A DNA stretch of 64,000 nt from Lepidodermella squamata (lineage: Eukaryota > Animalia > Gastrotricha). A model generated the notes under the pieces. The model was not told where the DNA came from and made no database searches. It worked only from the letters and a program-made list of their open reading frames with translations. How positions within the stretch are numbered: position 1 is the first letter of the stretch; each line of letters begins with the position of its first letter. Below are positions 12,033 to 44,943 of this stretch, piece after piece. A program made the position numbers and the translations under genes. Location: positions 3,162,001 to 3,226,000 of the forward strand of contig JBLDXI010000015.1 in the NCBI GenBank assembly GCA_047495785.1, written 5' to 3'.

Positions 12033-14248
12033 ATGTCAGCCCAGGTGGCCGTGATACTGCTTGCATCCCTAGCAGCCGTCGCTCGAGTTGAGGCGGCTAT
12101 CTACTGCTTCGAAGCACCCTCTATTCCTAATTCTGAGTGCTACAAAAATAACACGATAATCGACCCGACGAATCCGGTCGATGTCTTCAGAACTAACGAA
12201 TTTGTCACCTATCGCTGTTTGGCAGGTTACAAATTGGCCGGAGGCGACAAGCTTACGTGCCAAAGTGATGGAACATGGTCGCCAAAAACGCTACCACGCT
12301 GCGACAAGATTCCTCAGTGCGATAACTTGCCCACCTTTTCCAACGCCGTGTGCACAAGCACGGCATCGGCGCCCTTTGCGGATAACTCTAAAGCAACATG
12401 CTCTTGTAACTCCGGTTTCAAGTTGAGGTAAGCTATCACCCTTTGACGACTTTATGTTGGACCTAACGCCTTATATTTCTTACCAGTGGCTCTGCAACAT
12501 CGACTTGCAGCAGCTCGAAGTGGAGTACGGTGATTTGCGTTGCGAACCCGACGTGCCAGGGCGTTCCAGCCTTGACTAGTGGTACGTGCACCGGTGCCAA
12601 TGGAGCCACTGGATCGTACGCCATTGGCGCAAAGGCAACTTGCACTTGCAACTCCGGTTTTAAACTGACGGGCACAGCTAGCCCGACTTGCGGCTCGAAC
12701 GGTCAGTGGGGTTCTGTTCCCACTTGTGCGCAAGTTCTCTGCTTCGCGGCCCCATCGATCGACAATTCTGAGTGCTATCGTGACAGTAGCAAACTGAGCC
12801 AGACCGAAATGTCCCTTACCTTTCCTGTTGCAACTCTGATCACCTACAAGTGCTTAGATGGTTACGTCATGAGCGGACCTTCTGATGTCCTTTGCCAAGC
12901 TGATGGAACTTGGGGTAAGCAACCGAAATGTGAAAAGGCTTGCAAAGGAGTTCCCACGCTTGCCAATGGTCAATGTACCAGTAACAAAGACGACGACTTG
13001 TACGCACCGGCTGCCACTGTCCAGTGCAAATGCAACGATGGCTATCGTTTCTCAGCAACGGAGGCGACCAGAAATGCTACTTGCTCAACTAACAGCGTCT
13101 GGTCGGTCCCACTGTGCATGGCGAACCCGACAACAACTACGACGACAATGGCTCCAAAATGCCAGGGAAACCCGAAGCTTGACAACGGAGTTTGCCAAGC
13201 TTCTGGCGCCGATAATTCTGGCAACTTTCCTAAAGGGGCTACTGCCACGTGCTCTTGCAACGAAGGGTACCAATTTGGAACCGGTGCGTCGAAGACTGTT
13301 TCTGTGACTTGCTCAGCTGCTGGCCAGTGGCCGACACCGACCTCGTGCTCTTTGATTCCGATTTGCTCAGCTCTACCGACGTTTACAGACGGAACTTGCG
13401 CGAGAAACGACGGAGCCTCTGGGGTTATGTACGCTGGAGTATCCATCACTTGCACTTGCGCCGATGGATTTTCCACATCTGGAACTGTCACGGGTTCGAC
13501 AAGCCAAACAGTCACATGCAAATCCAAAGACACCTGGTCAGCGTCGTTGACAAAGTGCCAGCAAATTCCTAAGGATTGCAAGAGCCCTCCTCAAATTGAT
13601 GGCAGTGGCTGCTCGAACTGCAATACAGAAGGCGTTCCTTCGTCGGCAACTTATCCTTCGGGCACCATTGTCACATACACGTGCCGCTCAGACTATAAGC
13701 TTAGTGGCAATGCCAAAATCACATGCCAGAAAAACGGAACCTGGACCGAACTGCCAGTATGCACTTTGATCACGACGACGACAACTACCAAGGCAACTAC
13801 AACCATTTCAATTTGCCCGGCTGTACCGCCAGTCGACGGCGCCGGCTGTAACAACTGTAACAATCGAGCTCTGCCAACTTTCTTCACTGGCGATCAGATT
13901 CGGTACACTTGCCGAGATGGTTATCAGCTGGTTGGGAACGCAATCATAACTTGCTTGGCTGGTGGCGTTTGGTCTACGCCGCCCAAGTGCAACTTGATTG
14001 ACACGACTACAACGACTACAACGACTACAACAGCGGAACCTGACAAGGTCAATACTGATAATGGCAAAGGAAATGACGGCCAACCCAGCAACGGCGGCTC
14101 AGGCAATGAAGGTAGCGGAGGAAACAGCGGCAATAATGGCCAACAAATCGTGGGGGGAACAAGTTCTACTACTAAAGCTACAACGAAAACGACCACAACA
14201 AAAACGACCACGACAAAAACAGCCACCCGTCGAAACGGGAAACGGTGA
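12033..14248 (+). CDS. Secreted Sushi/CCP-repeat protein 1 (~9 modules, Thr-rich linkers), one intron
   Basis: Signal peptide MSAQVAVILL; repeated C..P....C...C..GY...C...GTW...P.C; intron about 12428-12486; ends RNGKR*. Confidence 0.9.
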
Positions 14249-14679
14249 ACAGGGCTTGCTGATACTTCATTAGCCACTAGTAGCTAGTAGCTGTATGAGT
14301 TAAAGAATGGGCCTAAATAAATAAAATATATGTTTTCGCATCCTGTCTTTTTGTTATCGATTGTTGCTCTATTACTTCTCGAGGCAAATGCTGATAAACT
14401 GTGTTAGACTGGTTTTCTATTAGCAAAAAAGTAATGATCTCCGTCAAATAATGATCTAAGCCTCTGTTACTTTCGGTTTAGCGCTCTATGTAGTTGAAAT
14501 CAGAGTACTTGATCATTATCACGATCCCCATTGAAATTGAATGAATGAAAAATAATTCAAGACGAACAAAATCGTGCTTACGAGCGCATACCTCAACATC
14601 ACGTTTAGCAAACCTCAGTTAATAAGGCTGTTTTTCTGTCGCCTATTTCATTCTTTGTTAAACATACATTGTTTTGTGA

Positions 14680-16876
14680 ATGGCGGACTTAGTAACAACA
14701 CTTTTGGCTCTCTGCTTGCTGCTGATCTCGCCAGCAAGCGCAGCAATCAGATGCTTCGAAGCACCTTCGATCCCAAATTCGATCTGCTACAAAGACATGA
14801 TCGAAGTGCCAGCCGATGACATGAGTGACCTAGTGTTTGAGATTGGCGAATTCGTCACATACGCTTGTATCCCTGGCTTCCGCTTGGTTGGGCCTTCAAC
14901 AGTGACATGTCAAGGTGATGGCAGGTGGTCTTTGAGGCCCAGATGCGTTGCAACAGGCAGCAGTGTCCCAGCACCTGCTCCATCCCCTGTTCAAAATGAT
15001 CCGCTCTGCCAAGGCGTTCCGATATTGCTGAACGGAATATGTTCAGGATCGATGACAGCAACTTATAGAAACAATCAGCAAGTTTCGTGCACCTGCTCCG
15101 CTGGATATCGCATCAGGTAAATTTCAAGCATTTTATCGCACGATTTGATTATCAACCATATCAACCATATTGTTTAGCAACTCAGGCATGGCAACTTGCA
15201 ATTATGGCCAGTGGATAAATGTTCCATCTTGCAGTATCAATAACACCCCGAGGTGCACCGGGGTGCCATCAATACTATATGGCTCCTGTCAAGGATCGCT
15301 TGGCGCTGCGGGATCTTATTCGCCAGGAAACACAGCGACATGTACATGCAATGGAGGCTTTACAATCAATGGCAGCCCTGTAGCATCTTGTTCTAGCAGT
15401 GGCCAGTGGATTAACGTTCCGAACTGCGCTCAAAAGCTGTGCTTCGCCGCTCCTTCGATTCCAAATTCTGAATGCTACAAAGATCTGAATATTCTGTCAC
15501 CATCTGCGATGGCAACTAGCACATTCAACGTAGGGGAGGTCATAACCTACAAGTGCTTGCCCGGATTCGGAATGGTAGGACAGTCTTCCTTAACGTGCGG
15601 TGCGGATGGAACTTGGGGATCGTTGCCTAGCTGCGTTCGCATCTGCGTCGGAGTTCCTATAATAAATAATGGGATCTGCCAGAACCCTAGCGTCGATGGG
15701 AACTACGGGATCGGGTCTCAAGTTATCTGCAATTGCGGAGAAGGGTACCAATTGAATGGCGGAAATACAGCTTCCTGTATTGCAACGGGCGCATGGGCAA
15801 ACGTTCCGCAATGCATACCAAATCCAAGATGCAACGGCTTCCCGGGTTTACTCAACGGCCAGTGCTCGGCTAACGGTGGAGATAGGGCAAATACGTTCCC
15901 AAGAGGGGCTCAGGCCACGTGCACTTGCAATAATGGGTATCAATTTGGGGGCAATGTGCCAGCCGTGTCAAGCGTCTGTGGTGCAAACGGCCAATGGAGC
16001 TCGCCACAGGCCTGTTTAGAAATCCCTGCCTGCAATTACTTGCCGGCGATATCGAACGGGCAATGCACCAGAAACGACAATGGGAACAGCCTAATGGTAA
16101 TCGGAACTTTAATTACATGCACTTGCAACCAGGGTTTTCAAGTTGGCGGCAATGAAAACCAAATTTCGATGGTGGTTTCGTGCCGGGCTAAAGATACCTG
16201 GTCGACGTTGCCTCGTTGCAATCCTATCAGAACAACGACCACCCCAACGACAACAACTACCCAGTTGCTGATATGCCCGAATCCTCCTCAGATTGAAGGT
16301 ACTGGCTGTGACAATTGCGGGCCGGCAAATCGAGCGCTTTTGTTACCTGGGACTACTGTGACATATCAATGCAGACCGAATTACCGCATGGAGGGTCCGG
16401 CTACCATTACATGCCAAAGAGACGGAACCTGGAGTACGTTTCCTCGCTGCATTCCTACTTCGAGTGGAATTTCAGGCACATCTGCTCCCAGTTCTCAAGT
16501 AACTTGTTCGAAGCCTTCTCCTGTTGATGGCGCTGGTTGTAACAATTGTAATAGAGTACTTCAAGAATTCAACATTGGGGATCAGATAAGATACACATGT
16601 CGAGATGACTACAGACTGGCGCCCGGGCAAACCGGGATCATAACATGCATGGCTGGAGGCGTATGGTCCACGCCCCCTACTTGTCTTCCAATCGGGAACA
16701 GTGTATTTATTGCATCCACAACATCTACTACCCCTCCTACTACAACTACTACCAGAAGAAGAGGTGGCAATGGAAATAACAACAATAATAACGATGACAA
16801 CAGCCGAGACAGGGACAGGAACAACGGCAGAGGTAACAACGGCAATAACAACGGCGGCGTTCGGCCACGCGGATAG
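14680..16876 (+). CDS. Secreted Sushi/CCP-repeat protein 2 (paralogue of protein 1), Asn/Gly/Arg tail
   Basis: Signal peptide; same module order and same intron position as protein 1; ends VRPRG*. Confidence 0.9.
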
Positions 16877-17218
16877 ACCGTATTTCATTATTCAATCTGT
16901 CTTTTATGATTTTCATTCAATAAATCATGCTATTTTGGAGCTTTTTTGGCTTGGCTTTTTCTCTCATTTGAAGTTTATTTTCGTGTTCATTTTTAGTCAA
17001 AACTTGAAACCCCCAAAACACGACTTGAGAATGAGAGTTGCAGTTGGATTATTTACTACTAAGCTTACATGCTGGCATTCTACTGCTTCTCACTGTTTTT
17101 GTTGCACGTGTTTTTGTTGCACGTGGGTGTTTGAGCATGCCACAACCACGTAACCACATATATACTGCGTCATCAATTTTCTGAGGTGAGCATATTGTAA
17201 TTTTTTAAGTTACCAGCA

Positions 17219-18984
17219 ATGATTTACCCTTTGATTTTAATCAGCAGCTGCCTAGCTGCGTTAGTTTCTTGCCAAAGTACCACTGTCTTCTGCAAAACTG
17301 GCCCACCTGCAGTGACCAATGCACTTATATTCCGATATGAGGCAAATGGTGCCGCCGTAGAGATAAATGAAAAAACGACGCCATCAAGTTTTCAATACAA
17401 AGCTGGTCAAGGGGTGAGGTACGCCTGTCAAAACGGTGGAAAAATGACTGGGTCGGCAGTGCTGAGTTGTCAAAATTCTGGTTTTTGGGGACCTGGTAAG
17501 CCGCCAACCTGCAGTGCCGGAACATCGGAACGCTCCTTGAGCACCGACTGCCGCAGCGCTCCGACAATCACGAACGGCGTTTGCCGACTGGAAGTTTCTG
17601 GCGGAGAGTATTCCAATGGTCTGCCAGTAGGCAGGCGTCGAAGGCAAACCACTCTAGTCCAATATGCGAATTGCGTTTGTAACAGTGGCTTCACGCTTCA
17701 GGGCACCCAGCGCCTCGCTTGCTCAACAGGTGGTTGGGGTGCCCTACCCAGTTGTCAAAGTAGATCTGTCAGCAGCTCTGGAAATTGCCAAGCAATCCCA
17801 ACAATCGCGAATGGAGATTGCGCATCAGCTGTTACTGACGGCGAATACAGTAACGGGTTACCCAGAAGCCTACCTGTAGGCACAAGCGTAGCCTCGGCAA
17901 CTAGCAGAAGGCTGCAATGTAGCTGCCGCAATGGCTTCACATTATCCGGCTCCAACATCGTAACTTGCAACTCTGGTGTGTGGTCTGCGCTACCGAATTG
18001 TCTCACAGCCAGCAGTTCAGCTATCAGTTGCCCTAACAGTGACCTACAAATTAGCAATGGTCTGTGCCAAGTTCAAGCGAGCTCGAGCGGTGAGTATTCC
18101 AACGGCCTGGGAGGAAGCAATCAAGTAGCGACTACGCAAGTCCTTAGATGCTCTTGCAATTCCGGCTACACTCTTTCTGGCTCGTCAAGTGTAGCATGCC
18201 TTTCAAGTGGGAGCTGGGCCACCTTACCGGCGTGTATCGTTGGCGGGGGAGGCGGTTCAGGTGGCCAGAAGTTTTGCGGATCGCCTCCCCAGGTGAACAA
18301 CGCTGACTGCTATAAAGGCGTACCAGGCGAGTCAGAAAGCGACGCCCTGGCAGTTCGAAGCCGCGTTCTGATTAACCTAACAACAAGATCAGGGGCCGTT
18401 TACACCGCAGGCGAGACAGTTCGTTTCATTTGTCGCGATGGTTTTACGATGAAAGGCAACAGTATAATGACATGCTTATCGAGTGGGGAATGGACGACAG
18501 CGCCTACTTGCACCCAAGCCGTTACATGTCCCAAGCCGCCTGCCGTCCCGGGCTCCGGATGCGACAACTGCGCAAGAGCTATGATAAGTTTTGTACCTGG
18601 GGATCAAGTTGGCTATGAATGCCGATCAGAGTAAGCAATACGCTTTATTGATACAAGATCGGCTAATTGAAATATCTCAATTCTAGTTACGTTCTGGTAG
18701 GAAATTATCTAATAACCTGTCAGGCTGATGGGACGTGGAGCACGCTACCTCAATGTGTTCTTCGCGCGACAACCACACCAACGGTTTGTATGGGACCACC
18801 TGTCATTCAGTTTGCTGGGTGTGATTGCGCTGATGACAATGCTGCTCTCAGAGCATTTAATGTTGGAGATCAAATCACCATAAGCTGCCGCGAAGGTTAT
18901 GTGAGAAGCGGCCCAGCTAGCGTCACATGTCAGTCGAATGGAAAATGGTCGACGTACCCCACTTGTAATCCTAGATCTGGCTGA
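17219..18984 (+). CDS. Secreted Sushi/CCP-repeat protein 3 with three GEYSNGL repeats
   Basis: Signal peptide, about 7 CCP modules, intron about 18631-18686, internal GRRRR, ends NPRSG*. Confidence 0.9.
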
Positions 18985-19500: not shown

Positions 19501-19857
19501 CGAGGATCGATTTGAGAAACGATCACCCGAAGACGCAGTCTGTGTAACACATTAGCTTGAGGAATTTCGCTACATTACAGCGGGAAGCGTCGCATCCGCA
19601 ATTGTAACATGGCATGAATTTGTTTACAGCACGACATTTGACTCGAGCAACGGGCGCCGTTCTCTCAGCCTGAAAATATTCTGTTCGCCACGTTAGACAC
19701 GAGCGCCCCTGGTGGTGTGAAAAAGCCTGCCGCTTCTTGTTTTTTTCGAAAGAAGTCTCGCTTTCATCAACTACATGGGTAATTAAATGTGTGGCAGTAC
19801 ATTTCAGGATGCATGCAATTTCGCGATGTAGCGTCCGCTTTCACGCGATTTCAGGCT

Positions 19858-19865
19858 TATATAAA
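19858..19865 (+). promoter_or_regulatory. Putative TATA box of Sushi gene 4 (copy at 25056-25063)
   Basis: TATATAAA about 60 nt upstream of the ATG. Confidence 0.55.
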
Positions 19866-19918
19866 GGCAGCAGAACAGTATAACGACCATCAAGTCAGTT
19901 TTGGTCTTACTCGATACA

Positions 19919-21739
19919 ATGTTGAAGGCTGTTCTCTCCTTTGCCCTTCTGGGCGTTGCTTGCTTCTTCCTCAGTTCTGTCGATGGCCGTCAGTGCGGCA
20001 ATCCGCCATTTGTCTACTGTGGCAACTGCTCAACCAAGCCATGGGCGGATTCCAGCGCAACGTCTTTCATTGTCAAAACTAGCGAAGTCAAGGATCTTCA
20101 ACTCTACGACCCCAATACTGTTGTTTACTACAAGCCGATCAACTCCAGCTGGGTTTTCACCGGTCCGGTTTCAGTCACATGCCAGACTAACGGTACCTGG
20201 ACTCAGAGCCCAACTTGCGAGATGATCTGCGCGCCCCCAACTGTGTCTTTCGGTACATGCGTTGGCGCCAAATTGGGCGGGAGGTACTTCCGAGTTCGAG
20301 ACCAAGCAAACTGCACCTGTCAAGCCGGCTACATGCGCTCAACTGGTGTTCTGAACCCGACGTGTAAAGAGTGGAATACTTGGCTGAACCCGCCAACATG
20401 CAAACCCATTGTTACGACCACCACCCTATTCCCTGGCTGCGCTAAGTTACCTTTAGTCGCTTACGGTACCTGCACAAGGATCAACACTACAAATCCACGC
20501 ATCGCCCTGGGTGAGGAAGTTTCTTGCTCATGCAACTCCGGATACTTCGTGAGCGCTACAGCAACACTGTCTGGTCGTAAACGTCGTGACGCTCTGTGGC
20601 CAACCAGCGCACGCGCTAGATGCATCGGAAATGACAAGTATTTTGCGTTAATTTTTGAAGGCAACTTGAGTTATTACCCCTCGCTAACCTCTCAGATTCA
20701 ACAACGTTCCCACATGCAAGCCTATAACTACAACCACCCTCGCTCCTATATGCGCAAGGCCGAAGGACGTTCCTAATACTGGTTGCGAGGGAAGCAACTG
20801 TATCGGTGGCGCCGACAACAAACAGATCTTTAAAATCGGAGAGGCCGTTACATTTACAGTAGGCTGACGAGCTGCCATTACTCAGAAGTCAAATTGTTAT
20901 TAATTTTCAGTGCAATCCTGGCTTCCAAATGTCTGGAAATCCCACGATTACTTGTCAGACCAATGGCGTCTGGTCCAAATCTCCAACCTGCGTCCGAATT
21001 GCCACAACCACCCGTGCTGCCGGCTGCGGCAAGGCTCCCGTTATTGCCGGAGGCGTTTGCCACGCCGAAGAAGGTGATGACGATAACGATGTTGACATCG
21101 GACGCACGGTAATTCAAGAGCCAATATATTATGCATGAAGTATAAATTCTGTCCTCAACCTTTAAGGTTTCCTGCGCCTGCAACGATGAAGATGACTACT
21201 GGTTTATTGGAGATCGCACTCTCAAGTGCCAATCTACCAGGACATTTTCAGGCGTCGTGCCAAAGTGCATGAAGATGACCACCACCCTGAAACCTATCTG
21301 CACGCTGTCTGCTTTGGACACTCTGGTTAATGGCTACTGCCAGTCAGCCGCGAATGACGGCGCGACCGACTTTGATGTCGGAGAGAAGGCTACTTGCGGC
21401 TGTGACGCAGGGTACCTAACCAATGGACTGAAAGGTGCAACTGTCACCCTGACCTGCAAGGGCATGAACCAGTGGGATGGTAACAGGCCATCGTGCACCT
21501 TCAGCTCGACTACCGCAAGACCTGTGTGCGCTTTCCCGAGTGAAATCTCAGGCGGATATTGCGAGGTTGATGGTCGTGAAAACGAAGATGACTTCGTCAA
21601 TGTCGGCGAATCTTTCACTTGCGCTTGCGATGCTGGTAAGAAATTCCCAGCCGGCGTGTCTGGCAAGGTCAAGTGCATCGGTATGAAGACATACGATGTC
21701 GCCTTGCCTTCTTGCAGTCAGCAGACCATCGGCGGCTAA
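19919..21739 (+). CDS. Secreted Sushi/CCP-repeat protein 4, three introns
   Basis: Signal MLKAVLSFALL; CCP modules; RKRR site; acidic loops; ends QTIGG*. Confidence 0.9.
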
Positions 21740-22780
21740 CTCTTCCATCCCCATGGCAGACTTTGACAGCAATTATTTATTCCGGTGATTTCTGCTATAA
21801 GCACATGCAATAAAAGTGATGATATTCAAGGTACAATGTGACGCGAATTTTGGGATTAAGTTTCACTATACACAGCATTTGAGCCAGCATTCAAATATTG
21901 CAAATATTAATGAACCTTAGTAGGTGTTGCGGGCCCTGTTTGCAATTTTCATCAAGACATCAAGATGGCTGCAAAAGTCGTTGATCGGCGAACAACAATA
22001 ATGAAGGGAACGGCTTGGTGTTCAGTCATTTCAAGGTCGGCGATATCAATGCAAATTGTCAATCTCCCTTGGCAGACTTGAGTTCATTTGTCAACTTTTG
22101 TTTGGAAGAAATGTCTCAACAACCAAGCACCTTCAGTGAGCAGTGACGCCTGCCATTTTTCAGCTGCATGAGCCGAGCCAGTATGAAATGCGTCACTTCG
22201 AACAGATGTTCAAACAGGTCTTTGTGTCCCTGCGCGATACGCTAGTCTGAGTTCCGATGCCCCGATTTATGAAACCAGCTTCTTCTGATGCAAAACCAGC
22301 TAAAACGACCCATGAACTCCGCGAGGCTTCATACTTTTTATCAGTATGTATTACATATCGCGAAAAATTGCCTGCTAAATGATCTCAATGGACAATAACT
22401 TTTGCTCTGATTCATTTTGTCTGCTTATTACACTTTGTTTTTCCTAGTTGTTTTCCCTAACATTGTGAAGCTGCCCTCTCGTGGGCGTAATAGTTGCTTC
22501 ACAATAAATACATAACTAAATAAATTTCCAATAAATGGATTTAAGGCTTAATTTCAGGGAAATGTTGTCCTGAGAAGTCGAATCGGATAACAAAAGCTCT
22601 AGATATGAAGCCAGTAACTGCAGAAACCTAACATCGTAATTCTGTAGAAGAATATTCCAACAAGGAAATCTCATCGAAACACCAGATTATCAGGCTGAGT
22701 ATGCGCGCTGATTGTGAAGTCTAACTTTCTTAGTGAAAACCTAAGCAATAAGGAACGTTTCGATTATTTTGTTTACTATA

Positions 22781-24460
22781 TTAACACCGACGAGAAGCGT
22801 TTGACACAGCAGCCGTTATTATATGTGTTAGGATATCTAATGTATCTAAAAAGTTTTCCGAGATGAAGATATCCTCTTTATTGGCTTTATTTTCCTCTTC
22901 GTTATTGGCGTCAACGTCAACGAACTCGATCTCAACGTCGGCAGCAGGTTCTTCGAATGAAGCTGGAGCGACATTAGAGTCCAATTCGCTTATAATCTTC
23001 AGCTTTTGACTAACTCGCCGGCGTTTTTTCAACGTTCGCCAAACGTTGCAGGCCTTTTGAAAAGGAAACGAGACAACTTCGATTGCCATAACGCTGATTC
23101 TCATCAACTGATCCAAATGAAAGGGCAGCAGGCGATTTCGGTGCTTATTCTTGATATGATTCATTGTGGAGAATCCTCGCTCGCAGTCAGCCGAAGATGC
23201 CACGAAGCTCATGAACACAGCCACCACAACTTTTGTATGCTATCAGGCACGTTAGGCATGGTAAAAAATCACTTGAAAGTGGCGAGGAGAGGCATGAATC
23301 GATCTGCGTTGCCCTTGGAAGCTTTGATGTAGAACGGTGGCCGGTGGCAATAAAAGGAGCTTTTTGACAGCCTGCCAGTCTTCAACAAATTGAGCTCGGC
23401 TTCGTGAGAGAATCGTTAAACAGTATTTGGCGTCAGTCGCTGTGACTTAGTCATTTCCATGCACGCTCCTGAAATTCAATTCAACATATAAAACTTTGGA
23501 AGATTTTCAGATTGTTAACTTAATTACCTGTCTTCGGCAAGTTTGACCAATGCTGGATCGAATGCCATGAAATTCAAGAGGGAAGCGTCATCGGTAAACC
23601 GACTTAGCTCATCACGAACAACGCCGCACAGCCTGGTAAAATGGCCACTCAGCTGGTCTCTCTCAAATTCGGCAACTTTATTCGGCGATGATTGAACAGC
23701 TTTTTCGATCCACGTGTTCACGTTGCTGGAAAGAGTGATAAAGTTGCACACGCACATGACTTCGGTTTGAGCAGTTATCGGATCCAAATCGGAAGCTTGC
23801 AGGAATTTGCTGAGCTGGGCCAAACATTCGAGCAAATAGCCGAAAACGGTTAGCCTTAAAATGAGTTTACTTTCATTTTACGATGAAATCCCGACCCCAA
23901 AGCTCTGCTGTTTGCATCGGGCGCAGTCTTCGCCTCGCTGTCAATAAAAGCCAACAAAGCATCAAATTGACGCGTGATCGAATTGACTGCTTCAGAGCGG
24001 CTTAACCATTAACCATCGAATAGTATGAACCTGCTTCACGGCCACCGTTCAATCACTTTACCAATCTCCGCAAATCTTGTTTTCCTGTCTGCCGAATGAG
24101 AAGTTTTTGTAGATTGATCGAATCGGCCTTTCCAGAATCTTGAACAGCTTGCAAAACTTGTTTTTGATGGCATCATTCCAAAGCTTCATTATGAGCCATA
24201 CAATGTTGGTCAATCATCGACGGGCAATGCTTTCTCATCAACACTCCTACCCCTCTCTTCTTACCCCGCATCACAGATGCTCCATCTGTCACCAACTGTA
24301 CGCACTTTTTAAACTTTTAAAGATTATTGAATGGAATGGCGACCCCTTCTCCTTGCACATTCCGTCATAACTTCGACGGAGGGCCGATATCCAAGCCGCT
24401 AGCTCTCGGAGCGGAATTCCTGAGGATTAGAGGAATCGTATTCCCCAAGATGCTTCATGA
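22781..24460 (-). mobile_element. Decayed hAT-superfamily transposase (ZNF862-like) pseudogene
   Basis: Motifs in the expected order: VTDGASVMRG, HCMAH (CxxH), TIRWL-SR broken by a 7-nt duplication near 24003-24016, SSADCERGFSTMNHIK..RNRL dimerisation domain; multiple stops and frameshifts. Confidence 0.9.
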
Positions 24461-24742: not shown

Positions 24743-27700
24743 GCGGGAAGCGTCGCATCCGCGATTGTATGGCATGATCTTGTCAATGCTCGACATTTCA
24801 CTTGAGGAAATCTAACTTGATATGCGCCGTTTTCTCCACCTGTAAAACGTCGGTTCGCCACGTTGGACGCGAGCGACCCAGGTGATGTTTTAACGCTCTG
24901 CCGCTTCTTGTTTTTTCTAAAGAAGTCTCGCTCTCATCAGCTATAGGGGTTTTTTAATGCCTAGCCATGCATTTCAGGCTACATGAGATTTCGCGCTATA
25001 GCGCCCGTGGGTATCGCCACGCGGTGTAGCGTCCGCTTTCACGCGATTTCAGGCTTATATAAAGGCAGCAGAACAGTATAACAACCATCAAGTCAGTTTT
25101 GGTCTTACTCGATACAATGTTGAAGGCTGTTCTCTCCTTTGCCCTTCTGGGCGTTGCTTGCTTCTTCCTCAGTTCTGTCGATGGCCGTCAGTGCGGCAAT
25201 CCGCCATTTGTCTACTGTGGCAACTGCTCAACCAAGCCATGGGCGGATTCCAGCGCAACGTCTTTCATTGTCAAAACTAGCGAAGTCAAGGATCTTCAAC
25301 TCTACGACCCCAATACTGTTGTTTACTACAAGCCGATCAACTCCAGCTGGGTTTTCACCGGTCCGGTTTCAGTCACATGCCAGACTAACGGTACCTGGAC
25401 TCAGAGCCCAACTTGCGAGATGATCTGCGCGCCCCCAACTGTGTCTTTCGGTACATGCGTTGGCGCCAAATTGGGCGGGAGGTACTTCCGAGTTCGAGAC
25501 CAAGCAAACTGCACCTGTCAAGCCGGCTACATGCGCTCAACTGGTGTTCTGAACCCGACGTGTAAAGAGTGGAATACTTGGCTGAACCCGCCAACATGCA
25601 AACCCATTGTTACGACCACCACCCTATTCCCTGGCTGCGCTAAGTTACCTTTAGTCGCTTACGGTACCTGCACAAGGATCAACACTACAAATCCACGCAT
25701 CGCCCTGGGTGAGGAAGTTTCTTGCACATGCAACTCCGGATACTTCGTGAGCGCTACAGCAACACTGTCTGGTCGTAAACGTCGTGACGCTCTGTGGCCA
25801 ACCAGCGCACGCGCTAGATGCATCGGAAATGACAAGTATTTTGCGTTAATTTTTGAAGGCAACTTGAGTTATTACCCCTCGCTAACCTCTCAGATTCAAC
25901 AACGTTCCCACATGCAAGCCTATAACTACAACCACCCTCGCTCCTATATGCGCAAGGCCGAAGGACGTTCCTAATACTGGTTGCGAGGGAAGCAACTGTA
26001 TCGGTGGCGCCGACAACAAACAGATCTTTAAAATCGGAGAGGCCGTTACATTTACAGTAGGCTGACGAGCTGCCATTACTCAGAAGTCAAATTGTTATTA
26101 ATTTTCAGTGCAATCCTGGCTTCCAAATGTCTGGAAATCCCACGATTACTTGTCAGACCAATGGCGTCTGGTCCAAATCTCCAACCTGCGTCCGAATTGC
26201 CACAACCACCCGTGCTGCCGGCTGCGGCAAGGCTCCCGTTATTGCCGGAGGCGTTTGCCACGCCGAAGAAGGTGATGACGATAACGATGTTGACATCGGA
26301 CGCACGGTAATTCAAGAGCCAATATATTATGCATGAAGTATAAATTCTGTCCTCAACCTTTAAGGTTTCCTGCGCCTGCAACGATGAAGATGACTACTGG
26401 TTTATTGGAGATCGCACTCTCAAGTGCCAATCTACCAGGACATTTTCAGGCGTCGTGCCAAAGTGCATGAAGATGACCACCACCCTGAAACCTATCTGCA
26501 CGCTGTCTGCTTTGGACACTCTGGTTAATGGCTACTGCCAGTCAGCCGCGAATGACGGCGCGACCGACTTTGATGTCGGAGAGAAGGCTACTTGCGGCTG
26601 TGACGCAGGGTACCTAACCAATGGACTGAAAGGTGCAACTGTCACCCTGACCTGCAAGGGCATGAACCAGTGGGATGGTAACAGGCCATCGTGCACCTTC
26701 AGCTCGACTACCGCAAGACCTGTGTGCGCTTTCCCGAGTGAAATCTCAGGCGGATATTGCGAGGTTGATGGTCGTGAAAACGAAGATGACTTCGTCAATG
26801 TCGGCGAATCTTTCACTTGCGCTTGCGATGCTGGTAAGAAATTCCCAGCCGGCGTGTCTGGCAAGGTCAAGTGCATCGGTATGAAGACATACGATGTCGC
26901 CTTGCCTTCTTGCAGTCAGCAGACCATCAGCGGCTAACTCTTCCATCCCCATGGCAGACTTTGACAGCAATTATTTATTCCGGTGATTTCTGCTATAAGC
27001 ACATGCAATAAAAGTGATGATATTCAAGGTACAATGTGACGCGAATTTTGGGATTAAGTTTCACTATACACAGCATTTGAGCCAGCATTCAAATATTGCA
27101 AATATTAATGAACCTTAGTAGGTGTTGCGGGCCCTGTTTGCAATTTTCATCAAGACATCAAGATGGCTGCAAAAGTCGTTGATCGGCGAACAACAATAAT
27201 GAAGGGAACGGCTTGGTGTTCAGTCATTTCAAGGTCGGCGATATCAATGCAAATTGTCAATCTCCCTTGGCAGACTTGAGTTCATTTGTCAACTTTTGTT
27301 TGGAAGAAATGTCTCAACAACCAAGCACCTTCAGTGAGCAGTGACGCCTGCCATTTTTCAGCTGCATGAGCCGAGCCAGTATGAAATGCGTCACTTCGAA
27401 CAGATGTTCAAACAGGTCTTTGTGTCCCTGCGCGATACGCTAGTCTGAGCGATGCCCCGATTTATGAAACCAGCTTCTTCTGATGCAAAACCAGCTAAAA
27501 CGACCCATGAACTCCGCGAGGCTTCATACTTTTTATCAGTATGTATTACATATCGCGAAAAATTGCCTGCTAAATGATCTCAATGGACAATAACTTTTGC
27601 TCTGATTCATTTTGTCTGCTTATTACACTTTGTTTTTCCTAGTTGTTTTCCCTAACATTGTGAAGCTGCCCTCTCGTGGGCGTAATAGTTGCTTCACAAT

Positions 27701-32923: not shown

Positions 32924-33885
32924 ATGATGGCGTGCAAACTCTTGAAGGTTTGGGTTGCAATTTCGGTTGCTGCTTTGTCGATTGAGGCAGCTCCTTTGCT
33001 ATCAGTAGCTCCTGGCAGCGCATGCCCACTACCACCGGCTGTGCCTGGTTCAGGATGCGAAGGCTCTGGCTGCCCTCAGGATTACGCTCCTCGCGTTATG
33101 AAATTCAATTTTGGTGACGAAATTACTTTCGAACGATGCCGCGAAGAATTCAACACGTAAGATAATGTTTTTCACATTTCCTCAGGATGGTAACGTAAAT
33201 ACTATAAAATAGGTATGGAAATCTGACTATACGATGCCTGAGAACCGGAAAATGGTCTGCAAATCCTGTTTGCGTGCCCAAAGCGAACTGTGGAGCTTTG
33301 CCTGTGGTCGCGAATGGAGCATGTTCCCCAGTTGGGGGTGCCGAAGATAGATATCCAATTGGTGCTGACGCAACCTGCATTTGCGACGATGGTTACGCTC
33401 TTAACTCGCCCGCTTCAACGACGATTAGCTGCCTGCGAAATGGAAATTGGAGCCTCATACCCAAGTGCCTACAGATCTCAGGAGGCAAGAAATGCGAAGC
33501 TGAATCTGCACCCAAGTTGCAGTTCGGCGCGTGTGTTAGCTTCTGGGGCGATGGAGCTTCATCATTCGATCAAGGCGAGGGTCTTCTATGTGAATGCCAA
33601 CCTGGCTACCGTATTCAGGGCAATGCGGACGTTCCTTGTCTCTCAGGAGGCAGATGGGGTCCCATGCCGACCTGTGTCGTCCCGAAAAATTGTGGCACTT
33701 TGCCGGAGGTCAGGTTCGGATTCTGCGGAGATGAAGAATCCACACTGACCTACGATGAGAACTCTGTGATTGATTGCAGCTGTAATGAAAACTACTACAA
33801 TGCCAGCCCGTACAATGCAAGTGTGACTTGCTCTAACGGATCGTGGAGCCGTACGACGCCAAACTGCGTGGCTATTCCCCGCTAA
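32924..33885 (+). CDS. Secreted Sushi/CCP-repeat protein 7 (4 modules), one intron
   Basis: Signal peptide; intron about 33157-33212; CCP Cys/Trp pattern. Confidence 0.88.
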
Positions 33886-34207: not shown

Positions 34208-35242
34208 ATGGCAGCAGAGTTTAACTCACGAGTGCTTAGCTGTTTCATCTTTATTCTATCCGCAGCGCAAATCTTCGCCGTTCGACCTTGCCGTTTGCCA
34301 ACTTACCGGTTTGCTACCTGCACAAACTGTGACAATCAAGCGTCAATCCAAGTGAGAAAATTTGTCCCCCGTTTTACATCTGTCACTTTTACATGCAATA
34401 CGGGAAGTGGCTCCTTCCGCCTCATATGTTTACAAAACGGAACGTGGGATGGAAGATCAAGCTGTGCAACTACAGGTGATGATGAGCAGACAGATGAGCA
34501 GACAGATGAGCAGACATTAGCTGTACCCGTGCCTACAGACTCCTGGGTTGGTAGCTTACTGACAGAGTGTAATGACAGTCCCTTAATACCGAATGGCTCG
34601 TGCGAAATAACTGATAATGTAAGGATTGCCCGATGCCAATGCGCAAACGGATATCAAATGTCATCAGATGAAGCAGAAGCTCAGTGCCAGCACGATGGAA
34701 CTTGGAGAATTGATTTCAGCTGTTCACGTCCGGTTTTAACTACAACCTCAGTTAGGCAATCAACAACGCCTCAATTTTCTGGATGTTTGACGTTACCTAT
34801 CGTAGAGGGCGCTGACTGCGTGGGAAAATGCGATGCCCCATTCTCGGTAAATGATACGATCAAGTTCATGTGCCGACGAAACTGGACCCTTGAGGAAGGA
34901 AGCAGTTCGTACTCCACTTGCAAAGCTTCCGGTCGATGGACTACGCTCCCAAAATGCATTTACACCCCTGGACGGGACTGCATGGCGATACCAACAATTG
35001 ACAACGGCGAATGTATCAATTGCACAAATGCAGCAGGCAATCAAGCGATTTCATATTATTCAGCGGGGCAGATGATAGCATTTCGATGCAAGAATGGATT
35101 CACTATTAGCGGCGGGAACAATTTGAGCGTGTGCAAAGCAAGTGGCAGGTGGAGTCCGATACCTACCTGCATTCAGGACGATCTCTCTAATAATTCAACA
35201 AAAGCGCCCATTAAAAATCTTCCTTCGGGTTCACTATCTTGA
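34208..35242 (+). CDS. Secreted Sushi/CCP-repeat protein 8 (4 modules), intronless
   Basis: ATG at 34208, signal peptide, CCP modules. Confidence 0.88.
   Translation: MAAEFNSRVLSCFIFILSAAQIFAVRPCRLPTYRFATCTNCDNQASIQVRKFVPRFTSVTFTCNTGSGSFRLICLQNGTWDGRSSCATTGDDEQTDEQTDEQTLAVPVPTDSWVGSLLTECNDSPLIPNGSCEITDNVRIARCQCANGYQMSSDEAEAQCQHDGTWRIDFSCSRPVLTTTSVRQSTTPQFSGCLTLPIVEGADCVGKCDAPFSVNDTIKFMCRRNWTLEEGSSSYSTCKASGRWTTLPKCIYTPGRDCMAIPTIDNGECINCTNAAGNQAISYYSAGQMIAFRCKNGFTISGGNNLSVCKASGRWSPIPTCIQDDLSNNSTKAPIKNLPSGSLS
34481..34516 (+). repeat. Coding 12-nt tandem repeat x3 (DEQT)
   Basis: gatgagcagaca repeated three times. Confidence 0.9.
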
Positions 35243-35287: not shown

Positions 35288-36943
35288 TCATATTTTCACA
35301 CAGGATGGTAATTTTGTCCATACTCCTTCATCGGAACAAGCAACTGTAGAATCGCCATTTAATGAATAATTGGGGTTACACTGACATTCGAGGATAAATC
35401 CTGGCAAGAAGTCGTCTTTGCCTCTGTCTTCATCCGAAGTAACATCACAATACCCATTTGTTATATCTGGTATTGAGTGACAATATAAGCTAGCTTTACA
35501 CATTGGTAAGGCGCTCCATTTTCCTTTCGGAGTGCATTCGATTTTGTCTGAAGAAGATGAATATGTGAAACCAACATCGCAATCACACACCACACTCTCC
35601 GAAACTTTAAACTGAGACGCTCCATCATTCGAGCTACTCTGACAGGCGCCATTCGGCAATTCCGGCAGCTCGCACATAGTTATGTTGGCAGGTGTCGGCG
35701 TTTCTTTTGGGAGACATTTCGGAGGAGGGCTCCAAGTAAGATTGGGCAGGCAAGTTATACTTGCTTCAGCTGGTGAAAGATCAAAGCCATCATCGCATGC
35801 GCAATTTATAATGGTTCCTGTTTGATAAGACCCTGGCTCCAGGTCGGGGTCCGGAGAAAAAAGCTGAATGTTCTGCTGGCATGATCCATTCGGAACCTTT
35901 GGCTCCGCTTTACACCCTGGCTTAAGAATTCTTGCACTGCAAGTAGGATAGATGGACCACGATCCGTTACCCAAGCATGTGACGGCCGGATTTCCGACCA
36001 TGTTGAACCCAGGTCGACATTGATAGATAATTGATTCTCCTGGGGCGAAATCCCTGCTGATCGTTGAAGGATGCTGGCAAAGCTCACAACCCGTATTTGT
36101 AATGTATCTAGGACGAGTGCATTTGACCGTACTGGTAGCGGTCGTCGTCGTCGATAAAGTTGGGGTTCTTGTTGATGCCGATGTTTTCGTCGACAATGTT
36201 GTCAGCAATGTCGTAGTTAGTAACTTTGTGGTCGGAGAGGCAGGGTTGCTTCTCGTTGCAGTAGTAATGGTAGAAGTAAACGTAGCTGTAGATGTCGTAG
36301 TGATAGCAGTAGCGGCAGTAGTAGTTGTTGTAGCAGCAGTCCTCGTCGTTGTTGAAGTTTTAATTGAACCACTTGTAACAGGTGTTTGAGGGGGCAGTCG
36401 ACTGGCAAGACCCCGAACGCAGGTTGCGTTTCCCGTCCAAGTTCCGTTACTAGAACATCTTATTTTACTTATACCGCCCCTGAAAATGAAACCATCAGCG
36501 CAAACGCATTGTATCTCTTGTCCCGGACTGTAATTTGTTTTGTCACTGAAGTCATCGCAGAGTCCATTTGTGATCTCAACGGGGGCTAAACAGGTTTTTC
36601 CGTTCGGGTAGCTTGTTGATTTCGGTAACCTTGTAGTGCTTGACCTGCCTGATGTTCGACGACACTCTGGTGATTTTTCCCATCTTCCGTCAGGTAAACA
36701 TCGTATTTCCGGTTCGCCAACTAATACGTATCCTGTAGTGCATTCGTACCACACTGACTGGCCGGCGGAATAGGTGGATACAGCACGATTGGTAAAATCG
36801 ACTGGAACCCGTAATGTCCTGCTTATACCTTGGATTGCATAGCAGACGCTATTCGGCACTTCCGGTGGCATAAAGCAAAAAATGATACCGTGTACATTGC
36901 CCACTGTAAGCATGAGCACGTAAAAGGCAAGCCAAGCATGCAT
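35288..36943 (-). CDS. Secreted Sushi/CCP-repeat protein 9 with mucin-like Thr-rich spacer, intronless
   Basis: Signal MHAWLAFYVL; 6 CCP modules; long T/A/S tract. Confidence 0.9.
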   Translation of the reverse strand: MHAWLAFYVLMLTVGNVHGIIFCFMPPEVPNSVCYAIQGISRTLRVPVDFTNRAVSTYSAGQSVWYECTTGYVLVGEPEIRCLPDGRWEKSPECRRTSGRSSTTRLPKSTSYPNGKTCLAPVEITNGLCDDFSDKTNYSPGQEIQCVCADGFIFRGGISKIRCSSNGTWTGNATCVRGLASRLPPQTPVTSGSIKTSTTTRTAATTTTTAATAITTTSTATFTSTITTATRSNPASPTTKLLTTTLLTTLSTKTSASTRTPTLSTTTTATSTVKCTRPRYITNTGCELCQHPSTISRDFAPGESIIYQCRPGFNMVGNPAVTCLGNGSWSIYPTCSARILKPGCKAEPKVPNGSCQQNIQLFSPDPDLEPGSYQTGTIINCACDDGFDLSPAEASITCLPNLTWSPPPKCLPKETPTPANITMCELPELPNGACQSSSNDGASQFKVSESVVCDCDVGFTYSSSSDKIECTPKGKWSALPMCKASLYCHSIPDITNGYCDVTSDEDRGKDDFLPGFILECQCNPNYSLNGDSTVACSDEGVWTKLPSCVKI

Positions 36944-37516: not shown

Positions 37517-38284
37517 ATGAAGAAAAATTATTATCAAGCCATAACATCACCGTACATTGTATCAGCTCTCATCTTACTAAGCTTCATTGGCAAGCCTTTC
37601 GTAAACTCAATATGCTTCCAAGCCCCTGGTATCGAAAATGGATTGTGTATGGCTAGATCGGCATCTATTTCGAGTCGGCGTGAGAATGAAATGCGGTGGA
37701 TGCAAACTGGCGGAAAAGCCGACTGCTTCTGCAAGCCACCATACAACCTCGTCGGCGAAGAAACGGTGACTTGTGAGGAAGATGGATCGTGGTCTGATGT
37801 ACCCTATTGCGAACTACCCCCTCTATGTTTCGTACTGCCTCAAATCACCAACGGGACATGTGTGGTCTTACACCCTGAAAAGCGTCTTGGAAATCAGTTC
37901 TACCTGAACATTGGCGATCAAGTTCTGTGTCGATGTCGACGTGGCCATGCAATATTCACGGAAAATCGTCAATGGTTCACTGACGCGCAGTTAGCGACTT
38001 GCATCTGGCGAAACAGATACGACTCTGATTACCTAACCTTCGACAATAGACTGCGTTGCAGGAAAATTTGCCGACCGTTACCAGATTATCTCGACGCAAC
38101 GTGTATCAATTGCAGCGAAAGATTGCCAACCGAAGATACAACCGTGTACGTCTACACCCCTGGTGACAAGGCGTTCGTTTGGTGTAATCAGTCTGACTAT
38201 CAACTGTCTGGCCCGTCTGTTTTAAAATGCTTGGACTCCGGTGAATGGCAGGGTCAAATGCCAACCTGTGAAGCGTTAACATAA
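37517..38284 (+). CDS. Secreted Sushi/CCP-repeat protein 10 (3 modules)
   Basis: N-terminal hydrophobic signal; CCP pattern, e.g. CKPPYNLVGEETVTCEEDGSWSDVPYC. Confidence 0.85.
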   Translation: MKKNYYQAITSPYIVSALILLSFIGKPFVNSICFQAPGIENGLCMARSASISSRRENEMRWMQTGGKADCFCKPPYNLVGEETVTCEEDGSWSDVPYCELPPLCFVLPQITNGTCVVLHPEKRLGNQFYLNIGDQVLCRCRRGHAIFTENRQWFTDAQLATCIWRNRYDSDYLTFDNRLRCRKICRPLPDYLDATCINCSERLPTEDTTVYVYTPGDKAFVWCNQSDYQLSGPSVLKCLDSGEWQGQMPTCEALT

Positions 38285-43993: not shown

Positions 43994-44319
43994 GAGGATG
44001 AAATAAAAGAGAATGCGCGTCACGCATAATCAATTTTTCGCCACCCTGCTCTTCATATAATTTTCGCTCAATTTTTTCACCCGCAGGTCAGTTGCACCGT
44101 GCGTACCTAATCGAGTTATATACTTGAAATTCTAAACCGCTCATATTACTTCCGTGGTGTGCGTGACAAATTGCGCCTGTAACAACAACAATGCTTCCTA
44201 ACACATAAAAGTTGAAAAAATAAATAATAAACAACGCTCAACACCTTTAAAATGAGAGGTTCATTCATCCCACGCACCGGGCGCAGAAATTTTCCCGCTC
44301 TTTAATTGTCCAGTAAAAA

Positions 44320-44943
44320 ATGGTTGCCATTGTTAGCTACATCGCTATTTCGGTATTGGTAATTTTCAACGAATTCTCAGCCGTTTTCGGCCAAGCTCGA
44401 GCTGTTTCCTACGTCGAACGGACTAACACTGGCGCGACTGGGCCGAAAAAGCGGCAATTATGGCCGACTAGCTTGCCGTTATGTGAAGGACCTCCAGTAG
44501 TCGAGGGCGCGAGATACATTCGTTTGTTACCCGGCGAAGATGTTAGCAGCAGTAACAGCTTCGAGGATAGCTATTACCAGCACTGGTTTTTCGACTCGCA
44601 AGGCAAGCGAATGCATCGATTCGTCGAGGGCGATCGAATTCAATTCAAATGCCGCAATCATCGCAAAATGATCGGCCCAGCCATTGTCAAATGTTCGAAG
44701 GGCCAGTGGACTGAATGGCCTGATTGTGTGCCGCATGGTCAGAAAAATAGCACGGTCAACCCTCATGACGCCTGGACTAGGGTTAGAACTACGAAACGCC
44801 CTACTATCGAATTTTTCCCTATGACTGTTTTGACTCCGAAACCTCCAACAACAATAGCACCGCTCGCAGTTCCTCCAGGAATGAGATTAGATCTCAACCC
44901 TAATGCAACAACTCTTCTCGGCAGTCCGAACGGTAAATTCTGA
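44320..44943 (+). CDS. Secreted single-Sushi protein 11 with propeptide and P/T-rich tail
   Basis: Signal peptide, KKR|QLWP, one 4-Cys CCP module with a long loop insertion. Confidence 0.82.
   Translation: MVAIVSYIAISVLVIFNEFSAVFGQARAVSYVERTNTGATGPKKRQLWPTSLPLCEGPPVVEGARYIRLLPGEDVSSSNSFEDSYYQHWFFDSQGKRMHRFVEGDRIQFKCRNHRKMIGPAIVKCSKGQWTEWPDCVPHGQKNSTVNPHDAWTRVRTTKRPTIEFFPMTVLTPKPPTTIAPLAVPPGMRLDLNPNATTLLGSPNGKF

What the first reader, a model, noticed from the sequence alone, without database searches (positions are those of the whole stretch)
12033..44943. Cluster of 11 secreted Sushi-only genes: candidate undescribed secreted-matrix system
Seen: 11 genes, each with a signal peptide, 1-9 CCP-like modules and Thr-rich linkers, and no obvious TM, anchor or catalytic domain; intron-poor and apparently still duplicating. 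Known: canonical CCP modules have 4 Cys and are best known from complement regulators and selectins. Inference: odd Cys patterns, oppositely charged inserts, mucin spacers and prohormone-style processing fit a co-expressed gland product (adhesive, cuticle, egg coat, biomineral matrix or venom) better than complement control.
Basis: partly seen in the sequence, partly recalled or inferred. Interest (0 to 1): 0.8.

Follow-up and report, generated by a model that had tools for sequence, protein, structure and literature searches.

The report
Cluster of secreted Sushi-repeat genes
Eleven neighbouring genes of an unidentified small invertebrate encode secreted proteins built only of unusual "Sushi" modules on sugar-bearing spacers; the family is real, expressed, fast-evolving and found only in this animal's close kin, but what it does is untested.

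Summary
Between 12033 and 44943 lie 11 genes with 64 Sushi/CCP modules (1-9 per gene). All have signal-peptide-like leaders and no transmembrane or anchor segment, and most have Thr-rich linkers. No module lies elsewhere in the window. G2, G3 and G4 are transcribed and spliced in RNA runs of two studies.

Only 2 of 64 modules have the classical four cysteines. The rest fall into three variants. One is a five-cysteine type whose lone cysteine is kept in a related species. Two AlphaFold models, of the five-Cys type and of one six-Cys type, match solved CCP modules.

Profiles of the variants find three more members in this 121-Mb genome, which holds at least 150 other Sushi modules. An exhaustive search of 1.84 billion proteins found kin only on scaffolds of one metagenome sample. 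There a housekeeping protein is 84% identical, against 32-41% for these proteins. Within-species variants are mostly synonymous (27 of 33).

They are not orthologues of complement regulators. The gland or matrix reading fits the anatomy: odd cysteine counts, mucin-like spacers, low-complexity tails and charged loop inserts. Tissue and co-expression could not be tested. The scan had already noted the C-terminal glycines of six of these genes (s1-431082).

Verdict: a lineage-specific variant of a common protein type, of moderate interest.

The parts
12033..14248 (+). G1: 718-aa secreted protein, 9 modules (A-B-B-A-B-B-B-C-C). It has Thr runs and a Gly/Asn/Ser- and Thr/Lys-rich tail ending RRNGKR. 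One 59-nt intron at 12428-12486.
   Evidence: Pfam; splice and translation; modules
14680..16876 (+). G2: 711 aa, colinear paralogue of G1 (44% identity), 9 modules, Asn-rich tail ending VRPRG. One 61-nt intron, 15117-15177.
   Evidence: The RNA joint 15114>15176 is GT..AG with the cut +2. Translation; modules; identity.
17219..18984 (+). G3: 569 aa, 7 modules (4Cys-B-B-B-A-C-C). It has GEYSNG loop motifs and RRRR in the loop of module 2, and ends PRSG. Intron 18631-18686; poly(A) end at 19041.
   Evidence: RNA joint, poly(A) loose end and cDNA-adaptor 5' end; alignment to P0003; modules
19919..21739 (+). G4: 550 aa, 7 modules, RKRR inside the loop of module 3, ends TIGG. Three introns: 20638-20695, 20859-20910 and 21109-21166. 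The cDNA 5' end is at 19892, about 30 nt after a TATA-like element.
   Evidence: Two joints confirmed in RNA; third intron predicted; upstream sequence
25117..26937 (+). G5: recent copy of G4, with 2 amino-acid differences.
   Evidence: Self-BLAST; protein comparison; DNA differences
28374..30539 (+). G6: 721 aa, single exon, 7 modules. Modules 2 and 3 carry giant loop inserts, poly-Asp/Glu then Arg/Ser/Thr-rich. Ends SSRG.
   Evidence: relative P0262 keeps the same layout
32924..33885 (+). G7: 301 aa, 4 modules (C-B-B-B), one predicted 56-nt intron at 33157-33212.
34208..35242 (+). G8: 344 aa, single exon, 4 modules (C-B-C-C), acidic DEQT repeat linker.
35288..36943 (-). G9: 551 aa, single exon, the only gene on the minus strand. 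6 modules (A-B-C-B-B-B) and a 99-aa Thr/Ser/Ala-rich linker.
37517..38284 (+). G10: 255 aa, single exon, 3 modules (B-B-C).
44320..44943 (+). G11: 207 aa, one long four-Cys CCP-like module plus a Pro/Thr-rich tail. It is the weakest member: no Pfam hit, and it lies 6 kb beyond G10 behind unrelated ORFs.
   Evidence: No Pfam hit; home profile E 5e-12
19822..22833 (+). First copy of a 3.0-kb tandem duplication carrying G4. The second copy is 25020-28028. They differ by 4 mismatches and one 3-nt gap.
   Evidence: The summed word depth of DNA run X1 rises about 2-3-fold from 19800, which is weak support that both copies exist.
25020..28028 (+). Second copy of the duplication, carrying G5.
22781..23227 (-). 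hAT transposase C-terminal fragment at the junction of copy 1 and the 2.2-kb spacer between the copies.
   Evidence: Pfam PF05699, E 6e-5. The spacer also holds a ~160-nt dispersed repeat.

Best explanation
The cluster encodes a lineage-restricted family of secreted glycoproteins. Each is a string of modified CCP (Sushi) modules separated by short mucin-like Thr-rich spacers.

Most likely they are exported together into an extracellular coat or secretion, such as mucus, glue, cuticle or an egg envelope. There they would act as extended, O-glycosylated rods. A conserved unpaired cysteine in the five-Cys 'type A' modules would link them covalently. Charged or low-complexity inserts and tails would link them non-covalently.

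Shown here: the architecture, transcription and splicing, the CCP fold of two module types, conservation of the odd cysteine, of the polybasic loop site and of the C-terminal Gly in a related species, fast divergence between species, and purifying selection within the species.

Inferred only: O-glycosylation, disulfide cross-linking, convertase cleavage, C-terminal amidation, the tissue of origin, and the matrix role itself.
For: - All 11 proteins have a leader and no TM or anchor segment, and no catalytic domain was found.
- 62 of 64 modules carry extra cysteines, in three regular patterns.
- The lone Cys of type A is invariant in 8 window modules and in 2 modules of the relative (A1).
- The mature Cys count is odd in G3, G4/G5 and G9. 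By my count it is also odd in G0, R795 and R611. An odd count means a free thiol or an intermolecular bond.
- Thr runs, a 99-aa Thr/Ser/Ala-rich linker (G9), Gly/Asn-rich tails (G1, G2, G0) and poly-acidic plus basic loop inserts (G6) are present. The G6-type insert is kept in relative P0262.
- Where the 5' end is mapped (G4), a TATA-like element lies about 30 nt upstream. Each of G2-G4 has its own transcript, with no cover between genes in RNA runs of two studies.
- The G1/G2-like and G3-like genes are adjacent in the relative too.
- Within-species variants are 27 synonymous to 6 nonsynonymous, so the genes are functional.
- The best named hits are non-colinear generic CCP proteins.
Against: - There are no tissue, cell-type or protein-level data, and co-expression is untested.
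- No shared upstream motif was found.
- CCP modules are classically recognition modules, not bulk structural ones.
- The Thr runs are short compared with true mucins, and there is no vWD or cystine-knot polymerisation domain.
- Fast divergence and tandem expansion fit immune or reproductive proteins equally well.
- The relative carries at least three members on two scaffolds, so clustering is not essential to the family.
Confidence: 0.42

Rival explanations
1. Soluble immune proteins. They would act as regulators or cofactors of thioester proteins (a role like complement control) or as binders of microbial surfaces, and would diversify under host-pathogen pressure.
For: - The CCP-only secreted architecture is that of factor H, C4BP and beta2-glycoprotein I.
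- Models of two module types match factor H CCP19-20 and CR2 best, at up to 41% identity for type C.
- The genome has at least 10 thioester-domain genes.
- Divergence is fast between species (32-41% against 84% for CSTF3), with tandem duplication.
- From general knowledge, C4BP forms disulfide-linked oligomers, so odd cysteines also fit this reading.
Against: - There is no colinear similarity to any complement regulator.
- No anaphylatoxin (ANATO) domain was detected, so a true C3 is not shown. That search had no positive control.
- Low-complexity tails, mucin spacers and giant charged inserts are not features of known regulators.
- Variants within the species are mostly synonymous, which gives no sign of diversifying selection in G2 and G3.
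Confidence: 0.25
2. Gamete or egg-envelope recognition proteins, comparable to the CCP-only sperm protein ZP3R/sp56. On this reading they evolve fast because of sexual selection.
For: Very fast divergence between related species together with purifying selection within the species. They are secreted, oligomer-prone CCP strings. The family is restricted to one lineage.
Against: Transcripts were assembled from the RNA runs of two studies, whose samples I could not characterise. Eleven to fourteen paralogues with very different charge and length are more than a typical recognition pair. Nothing is known about sex- or germline-specific expression.
Confidence: 0.1
3. Organisers of synaptic or basement-membrane matrix, like the CCP-only proteins LEV-9, Hig and Hasp. 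An ionotropic glutamate receptor gene lies just upstream of the cluster.
For: A secreted CCP-only architecture, and neighbouring glutamate-receptor and class C receptor genes in the window.
Against: From general knowledge, such organisers are conserved and low in copy number. This family is absent outside one lineage and diverges fast. The receptor neighbours are probably coincidental.
Confidence: 0.05

Closest known systems
Regulators of complement activation and other soluble CCP-only proteins (factor H, C4BP, beta2-glycoprotein I)
   Same: Secreted strings of ~60-residue CCP modules. The four consensus Cys and the Trp are present. Models of two module types superpose on factor H CCP19-20, CR2, MCP and beta2-GPI (TM 0.7-0.78). 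Pfam and PDB sequence hits go to these proteins.
   Different: No colinear orthology (20-29% identity). 62 of 64 modules carry one or two extra cysteines. Thr-rich spacers, low-complexity tails and giant charged loop inserts are present. No anaphylatoxin-bearing C3 was detected in the genome.
Selectin-type six-cysteine CCP modules (from general knowledge; not verified in a paper here)
   Same: Type B modules have a third cysteine pair. One Cys follows the first strand (NGxC) and one lies just before the second consensus Cys. E-selectin structures are among the fold matches.
   Different: As I recall it, the spacing is CxC here against CxxxC in selectins. There is no C-type lectin domain, EGF domain or membrane anchor. 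Types A and C have no selectin counterpart that I know of.
CCP-bearing components of invertebrate secretions, such as some Oikopleura house proteins (oikosins) and a limpet pedal-mucus protein
   Same: CCP modules occur in proteins of secreted extracellular materials (PMC3390340, PMC7333891).
   Different: In the limpet protein the CCP modules accompany several other domains, and the oikosin figure legends list CCP among many domain types. Here CCP is the only domain. No sequence relationship was shown.
Cell-surface complement regulators with Ser/Thr-rich stalks (DAF/CD55, MCP/CD46; general knowledge)
   Same: CCP modules combined with O-glycosylated Ser/Thr-rich segments.
   Different: Those proteins have one stalk next to a membrane anchor. 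Here the short Thr runs lie between modules and there is no anchor.

Membership tests
Sushi/CCP/SCR domain (Pfam PF00084) | Profile match over the curated cut-off | tested here: met
   10 of 11 genes, 24-197 bits against a cut-off of 20.7. G11 has no Pfam hit and matches only the window-derived profile.
Sushi/CCP/SCR domain (Pfam PF00084) | Four consensus cysteines and a conserved Trp in a module of about 60 residues | tested here: met
   The four consensus Cys are present in all modules except module 1 of G4 and G5, which lacks the second. Trp is present in nearly all modules, and 62 of 64 have extra Cys.
Sushi/CCP/SCR domain (Pfam PF00084) | CCP beta-sandwich fold | tested here: met
   AlphaFold2 models of type A (pLDDT 90) and type C (pLDDT 84) match solved CCP modules at TM 0.66-0.78. 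Type B was not modelled.
Sushi/CCP/SCR domain (Pfam PF00084) | Disulfide pairing 1-3 and 2-4 | not testable with these tools
The pairing of the extra cysteines is inferred from their positions only.
Regulators of complement activation | Orthology or colinear similarity to factor H, C4BP, DAF, MCP or CR1/2 | tested here: not met
   The named hits are generic and non-colinear, at 20-29% identity. In the exhaustive search only metagenome proteins P0003, P0246 and P0262 are kin.
Regulators of complement activation | A C3-type target in the same genome | tested here: inconclusive
   At least 10 thioester-domain genes but no ANATO hit. The ANATO search had no positive control.
Selectins | C-type lectin + EGF + CCP + transmembrane anchor | tested here: not met
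   No lectin domain or TM segment. The EGF-type Pfam hits are short CxC motif matches that fall inside the Sushi modules. The whole-protein cEGF scores of G1-G3 exceed that family's cut-off, but only one stretch, in G3, passes on its own.
Gel-forming mucins | Long PTS domains with vWD and cystine-knot polymerisation domains | tested here: not met
   Thr runs are 3-11 residues long, the longest linker is 99 aa, and Pfam finds no vWD or CK domain.
Peptide prohormones | Several short peptides flanked by dibasic sites, with Gly-basic amidation signals | tested here: not met
   Each of G3, G4 and G5 has one R-x-K/R-R site, inside a folded module. There is C-terminal Gly in G2-G6, GKR in G1 and GR in G0. 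Each protein is a disulfide-rich multi-domain chain, not a peptide precursor.

The most novel reading that the evidence does not exclude
The family would be the protein part of an undescribed secreted material of this lineage. Rods of CCP modules would be joined covalently through the conserved lone cysteine of type A modules. They would be joined electrostatically through conserved acidic and basic loop inserts, in the manner of a coacervate. They would be matured by convertase cuts inside module loops and by C-terminal amidation of whole proteins. The genome's expanded PHM/DBH-type monooxygenase family could supply the amidating enzyme.
Probability: 0.12. Interest if true: 0.7.

Novelty: new variant of a known kind. 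Interest (0 to 1): 0.4.

Why it matters
If the matrix reading is right, this would be a material built from a domain better known for recognition. It would have a simple and testable grammar: a lone-cysteine module for cross-links, mucin spacers, and charged loop inserts. It would also be a rare case of large secreted proteins that keep a C-terminal glycine across species.

If the reading is wrong, the cluster is one more lineage-specific expansion of CCP proteins, as many invertebrates have. Either way the three cysteine frameworks extend the known range of CCP modules. They also give markers for tracing this family once the organism and its relatives are annotated.

Tried and rejected
- **Organism identity.** An intronless HSP70 gave no close named relative (75-78% to bivalves, arthropods and vertebrates; one unnamed metagenome protein at 83%). 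Earlier notes of the scan call the animal a spiralian, which I did not verify. I considered larvacean, rotifer, gastrotrich, flatworm and sponge from indirect clues and could settle none.
- **Oikosin link.** Some Oikopleura house proteins have CCP modules, but nothing shows that this is a larvacean.
- **Amidating lyase in the cluster.** The NHL-repeat ORF at 38340-39065(-) could have been one, which would have linked it to the C-terminal glycines. It resembles TRIM-NHL proteins instead.
- **Shared promoter motif.** None found beyond TATA-like elements.
- **Word-based homologue searches.** The G2 search found one true relative (P0003) and the G3/P0003 alignment found no further one.
- **Exhaustive search.** The list was swamped by giant multi-CCP proteins. 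Filtering by cysteine motifs recovered only P0246 and P0262.
- **ESM Atlas features.** They returned only generic chordate Sushi clusters.
- **Paper search on six-cysteine CCP modules.** It gave nothing usable.
- **Not attempted.** Complex prediction of a type A homodimer, since a negative result would not inform.
Full report
**What is there**

The window is eukaryotic DNA of about 44% G+C from contig C15 of a 121-Mb assembly. Pfam finds the Sushi/CCP domain over its cut-off in the long open frames between 12 and 38 kb. I built a profile from the window's own modules and iterated it over all six frames. It finds 67 module hits, every one between 12105 and 44727, and none in the remaining 31 kb.

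**Gene models**

| Gene | Coordinates | Strand |
|---|---|---|
| G1 | 12033-14248 | + |
| G2 | 14680-16876 | + |
| G3 | 17219-18984 | + |
| G4 | 19919-21739 | + |
| G5 | 25117-26937 | + |
| G6 | 28374-30539 | + |
| G7 | 32924-33885 | + |
| G8 | 34208-35242 | + |
| G9 | 35288-36943 | - |
| G10 | 37517-38284 | + |
| G11 | 44320-44943 | + |

- They hold 9, 9, 7, 7, 7, 7, 4, 4, 6, 3 and 1 modules.
- Introns are few (0-3 per gene) and tiny (52-61 nt).
- All 11 proteins start with a hydrophobic leader. None has a later hydrophobic stretch of TM strength, and none has a hydrophobic tail.
- No catalytic domain appears.
- Thr runs lie between modules in eight genes. G9 has a 99-residue Thr/Ser/Ala-rich linker. 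G1 and G2 end in long Gly/Asn-rich tails. G6 carries poly-Asp/Glu and then Arg/Ser/Thr-rich inserts inside two modules.
- G11 is the weakest member. It has one long four-Cys module and no Pfam hit, and it lies 6 kb away behind unrelated ORFs.

**Expression**

One run-finding call and one read-laying run were allowed.

- Runs X2, X3 and X4 come from two studies. They cover only the exons of G2, G3 and G4 and leave the intergenic DNA bare.
- They show four GT..AG joints that match my introns: 15114>15176, 18630>18687, 20637>20696 and 20858>20911.
- They show a poly(A) end at 19041.
- They show cDNA-adaptor-like 5' ends at 17218 and 19892. The second lies about 30 nt after a TATA-like element.
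- So these genes are transcribed and spliced, and each has its own transcript.
- Run X1 is DNA and covers everything.
- Contigs cannot rank expression, and the samples carry no tissue label. Co-expression remains untested.

**The modules are not classical**

Only 2 of 64 modules have the four-cysteine pattern (with manual correction for modules that the profile envelope split).

| Type | Modules | Pattern |
|---|---|---|
| B | 36 | A third pair: one Cys after NGx, and one two residues before the second consensus Cys (CxC) |
| C | 16 | Two extra Cys close together after the first strand (GCxNC, GCDC, CPC and the like) |
| A | 8 | Five Cys: a lone extra Cys in the motif N-S/A-x-C-Y/F |
| Type-C-like | 2 | Five Cys and no second consensus Cys (G4 and G5, module 1) |
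| Classical | 2 | Four Cys (G3 module 1, G11) |

- The lone Cys of type A is invariant in all eight window copies and in two copies from a related species.
- The mature Cys count is odd in G3 (39), G4/G5 (41) and G9 (35).
- By my count it is also odd in G0 and in both relatives R795 and R611.
- AlphaFold2 models of type A (pLDDT 90) and type C (pLDDT 84) are CCP folds. Their best matches are factor H CCP19-20, CR2, MCP and beta2-GPI.
- In the type C model the least confident stretch is the one that holds the extra Cys pair.
- I could not read coordinates, so the pairing of the extra cysteines is inferred.

**Place in the genome**

The genome is rich in Sushi domains. All 150 scored candidates passed the Pfam cut-off, out of 1734 first-look candidates, and they lie in many clusters. 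Profiles of type A and type C separate this family cleanly.

- The window's modules score 70-97 bits and the bulk of the genome scores at most 58.
- Only three further genes reach the high range.
- G0 lies on the same contig 867 kb away. It is 513 aa, 57% identical to G1, and ends NRRGR.
- Two G4-like genes lie on contig C1.
- One outlying locus that I inspected on C16 has classical four-Cys modules.
- So it is the subtype that marks this cluster, not the domain.

**Relatives elsewhere**

- The word search with G2 found one true relative, P0003. The second, with a G3/P0003 alignment, found no further one.
- The exhaustive search of 1.84 billion representatives added P0246 and P0262 after filtering by cysteine motifs. 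The other best hits that I read have classical four-Cys modules.
- All three lie on metagenome scaffolds. I read the study code in their names as an ocean survey, from memory only. P0262 and copies of P0003 lie on scaffolds of one sample, which I take to be one organism.
- There a 795-aa G1/G2-like gene (R795) and the 611-aa G3-like gene (R611, the protein P0003) are adjacent and in the same order as here. P0246 is a 653-aa variant of R795.
- The G6-like gene lies on another scaffold among unrelated genes.
- That organism's CSTF3 is 84% identical to this genome's. The Sushi proteins are 32-41% identical.

Several features survive this divergence:

- the module order;
- the type A lone Cys;
- GEYxNG loop motifs;
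- a polybasic site at the same loop position (RRRR here, RGKR there);
- the acidic-then-basic giant insert of G6;
- a C-terminal Gly, or Gly followed by basic residues, in G0-G6, R795 and R611.

**Selection and turnover**

- Of 33 coding variants between the assembly and the laid runs in G2 and G3, 27 are synonymous. The genes are under purifying selection now.
- G1 and G2 are colinear whole-gene duplicates (44% identity). G0 is a shortened G1.
- G4 and G5 differ by 4 mismatches and one 3-nt gap in 3 kb.
- A hAT fragment and a dispersed repeat lie in the spacer between G4 and G5.
- The DNA run's summed word depth rises about 2-3-fold in the duplicated part. That is weak support that the duplication is real and not an assembly error.
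- R795 holds an internal duplication of a module pair.

**What it most likely does**

The proteins are exported and anchorless, made only of binding-type modules on spacers likely to carry sugars. Several cannot pair all their cysteines within one chain.

With the low-complexity tails and the conserved charged inserts, this best fits components of an extracellular coat or secretion that are cross-linked after export. I put it at about 0.4.

The main rival is a humoral immune role, at about 0.25. The fold matches are to complement regulators, the genome has at least 10 thioester proteins, and fast divergence suits it. Against it:

- no ANATO domain was found, though that search had no positive control;
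- there is no orthology to any regulator;
- the variants show no sign of diversifying selection.

Gamete or egg-coat recognition (0.1) and synaptic matrix organisers (0.05) are less likely. The rest of the probability I leave to functions not listed here.

Convertase cleavage and amidation are plausible, because the motifs are conserved and the genome has PHM-type monooxygenase genes (39 hits). They are untested.

**Comparison and novelty**

This is a member of the CCP superfamily, and the sequence and fold tests are met. It is not a member of the complement-regulator, selectin, mucin or prohormone families, because defining features were tested and not met.

Secreted CCP proteins, and CCP modules in invertebrate secretions, are known. 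Lineage-specific CCP expansions are common. What I found described nowhere is the set of three cysteine frameworks, the conserved lone cysteine, the conserved charged loop inserts and the conserved C-terminal glycine.

I rate it a new variant of a known kind, with interest 0.4.

Noticed in passing
window 16833: All laid runs carry 12 extra bases here (TAACAACGGCAA or TAACAATGGCAA) relative to the assembly. That adds four residues to the Asn-rich tail of G2, so it is either a length polymorphism or a small assembly error.
   Followed up: no
G000:C13:1.99-2.36 Mb and elsewhere: 39 hits to the copper type II monooxygenase domain (PHM/DBH type), most in one region of contig C13. This is an unusually large family. 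The best hit (141 bits, C12:759231-759629) may be the true amidating enzyme.
   Followed up: no
G000: C13, C38, C9, C33, C29, C42, C10, C12: At least 10 thioester-domain (TEP/A2M/C3-like) genes, but no anaphylatoxin domain hit. The ANATO search had no positive control.
   Followed up: partly
window 38340-39065 (-): An NHL-repeat beta-propeller ORF inside the cluster. It resembles TRIM2/3/71-type NHL domains, not peptidyl-hydroxyglycine lyase.
   Followed up: yes
window 41135-41569 (-): A 144-aa ORF with a hydrophobic leader and many cysteines (including CSVC and CTCLCC), and no Pfam hit. It may be a small secreted protein between G10 and G11.
   Followed up: no
window 50680-52300, 53836-54468 and 58370-59889 (+): Several ORFs look like paralogues of each other (for example 51413-52300 and 59035-59889 share EWSRY..., FGxYRL..., DPPS...). 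They have no Pfam hit and flank a 987-aa ORF (55290-58253) with a hydrophobic tail and, by eye, a kringle-like stretch. This may be a second local gene family of unknown function.
   Followed up: no
window 5363-8983, 48432-49414 and 60576-63149: Neighbours of the cluster: an ORF set with an ANF-receptor domain that looks by eye like an ionotropic glutamate receptor, exons that look by eye like eIF2-gamma, and an 857-aa single-ORF class C receptor, likewise with an ANF-receptor domain.
   Followed up: partly
L002:8426-9238: In the relative's G1/G2-like gene, a pair of modules with its linker is repeated with identical protein sequence (modules 6-7 = 8-9). This is either a very recent internal duplication or a metagenome assembly effect. 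A 653-aa variant of the gene (P0246, locus L003) also exists.
   Followed up: partly
window 24743-25007 versus 19580-19837: The last ~265 nt of the spacer between the G4 and G5 copies match the region upstream of G4 at 75% identity. This suggests an older layer of duplication under the recent one.
   Followed up: no
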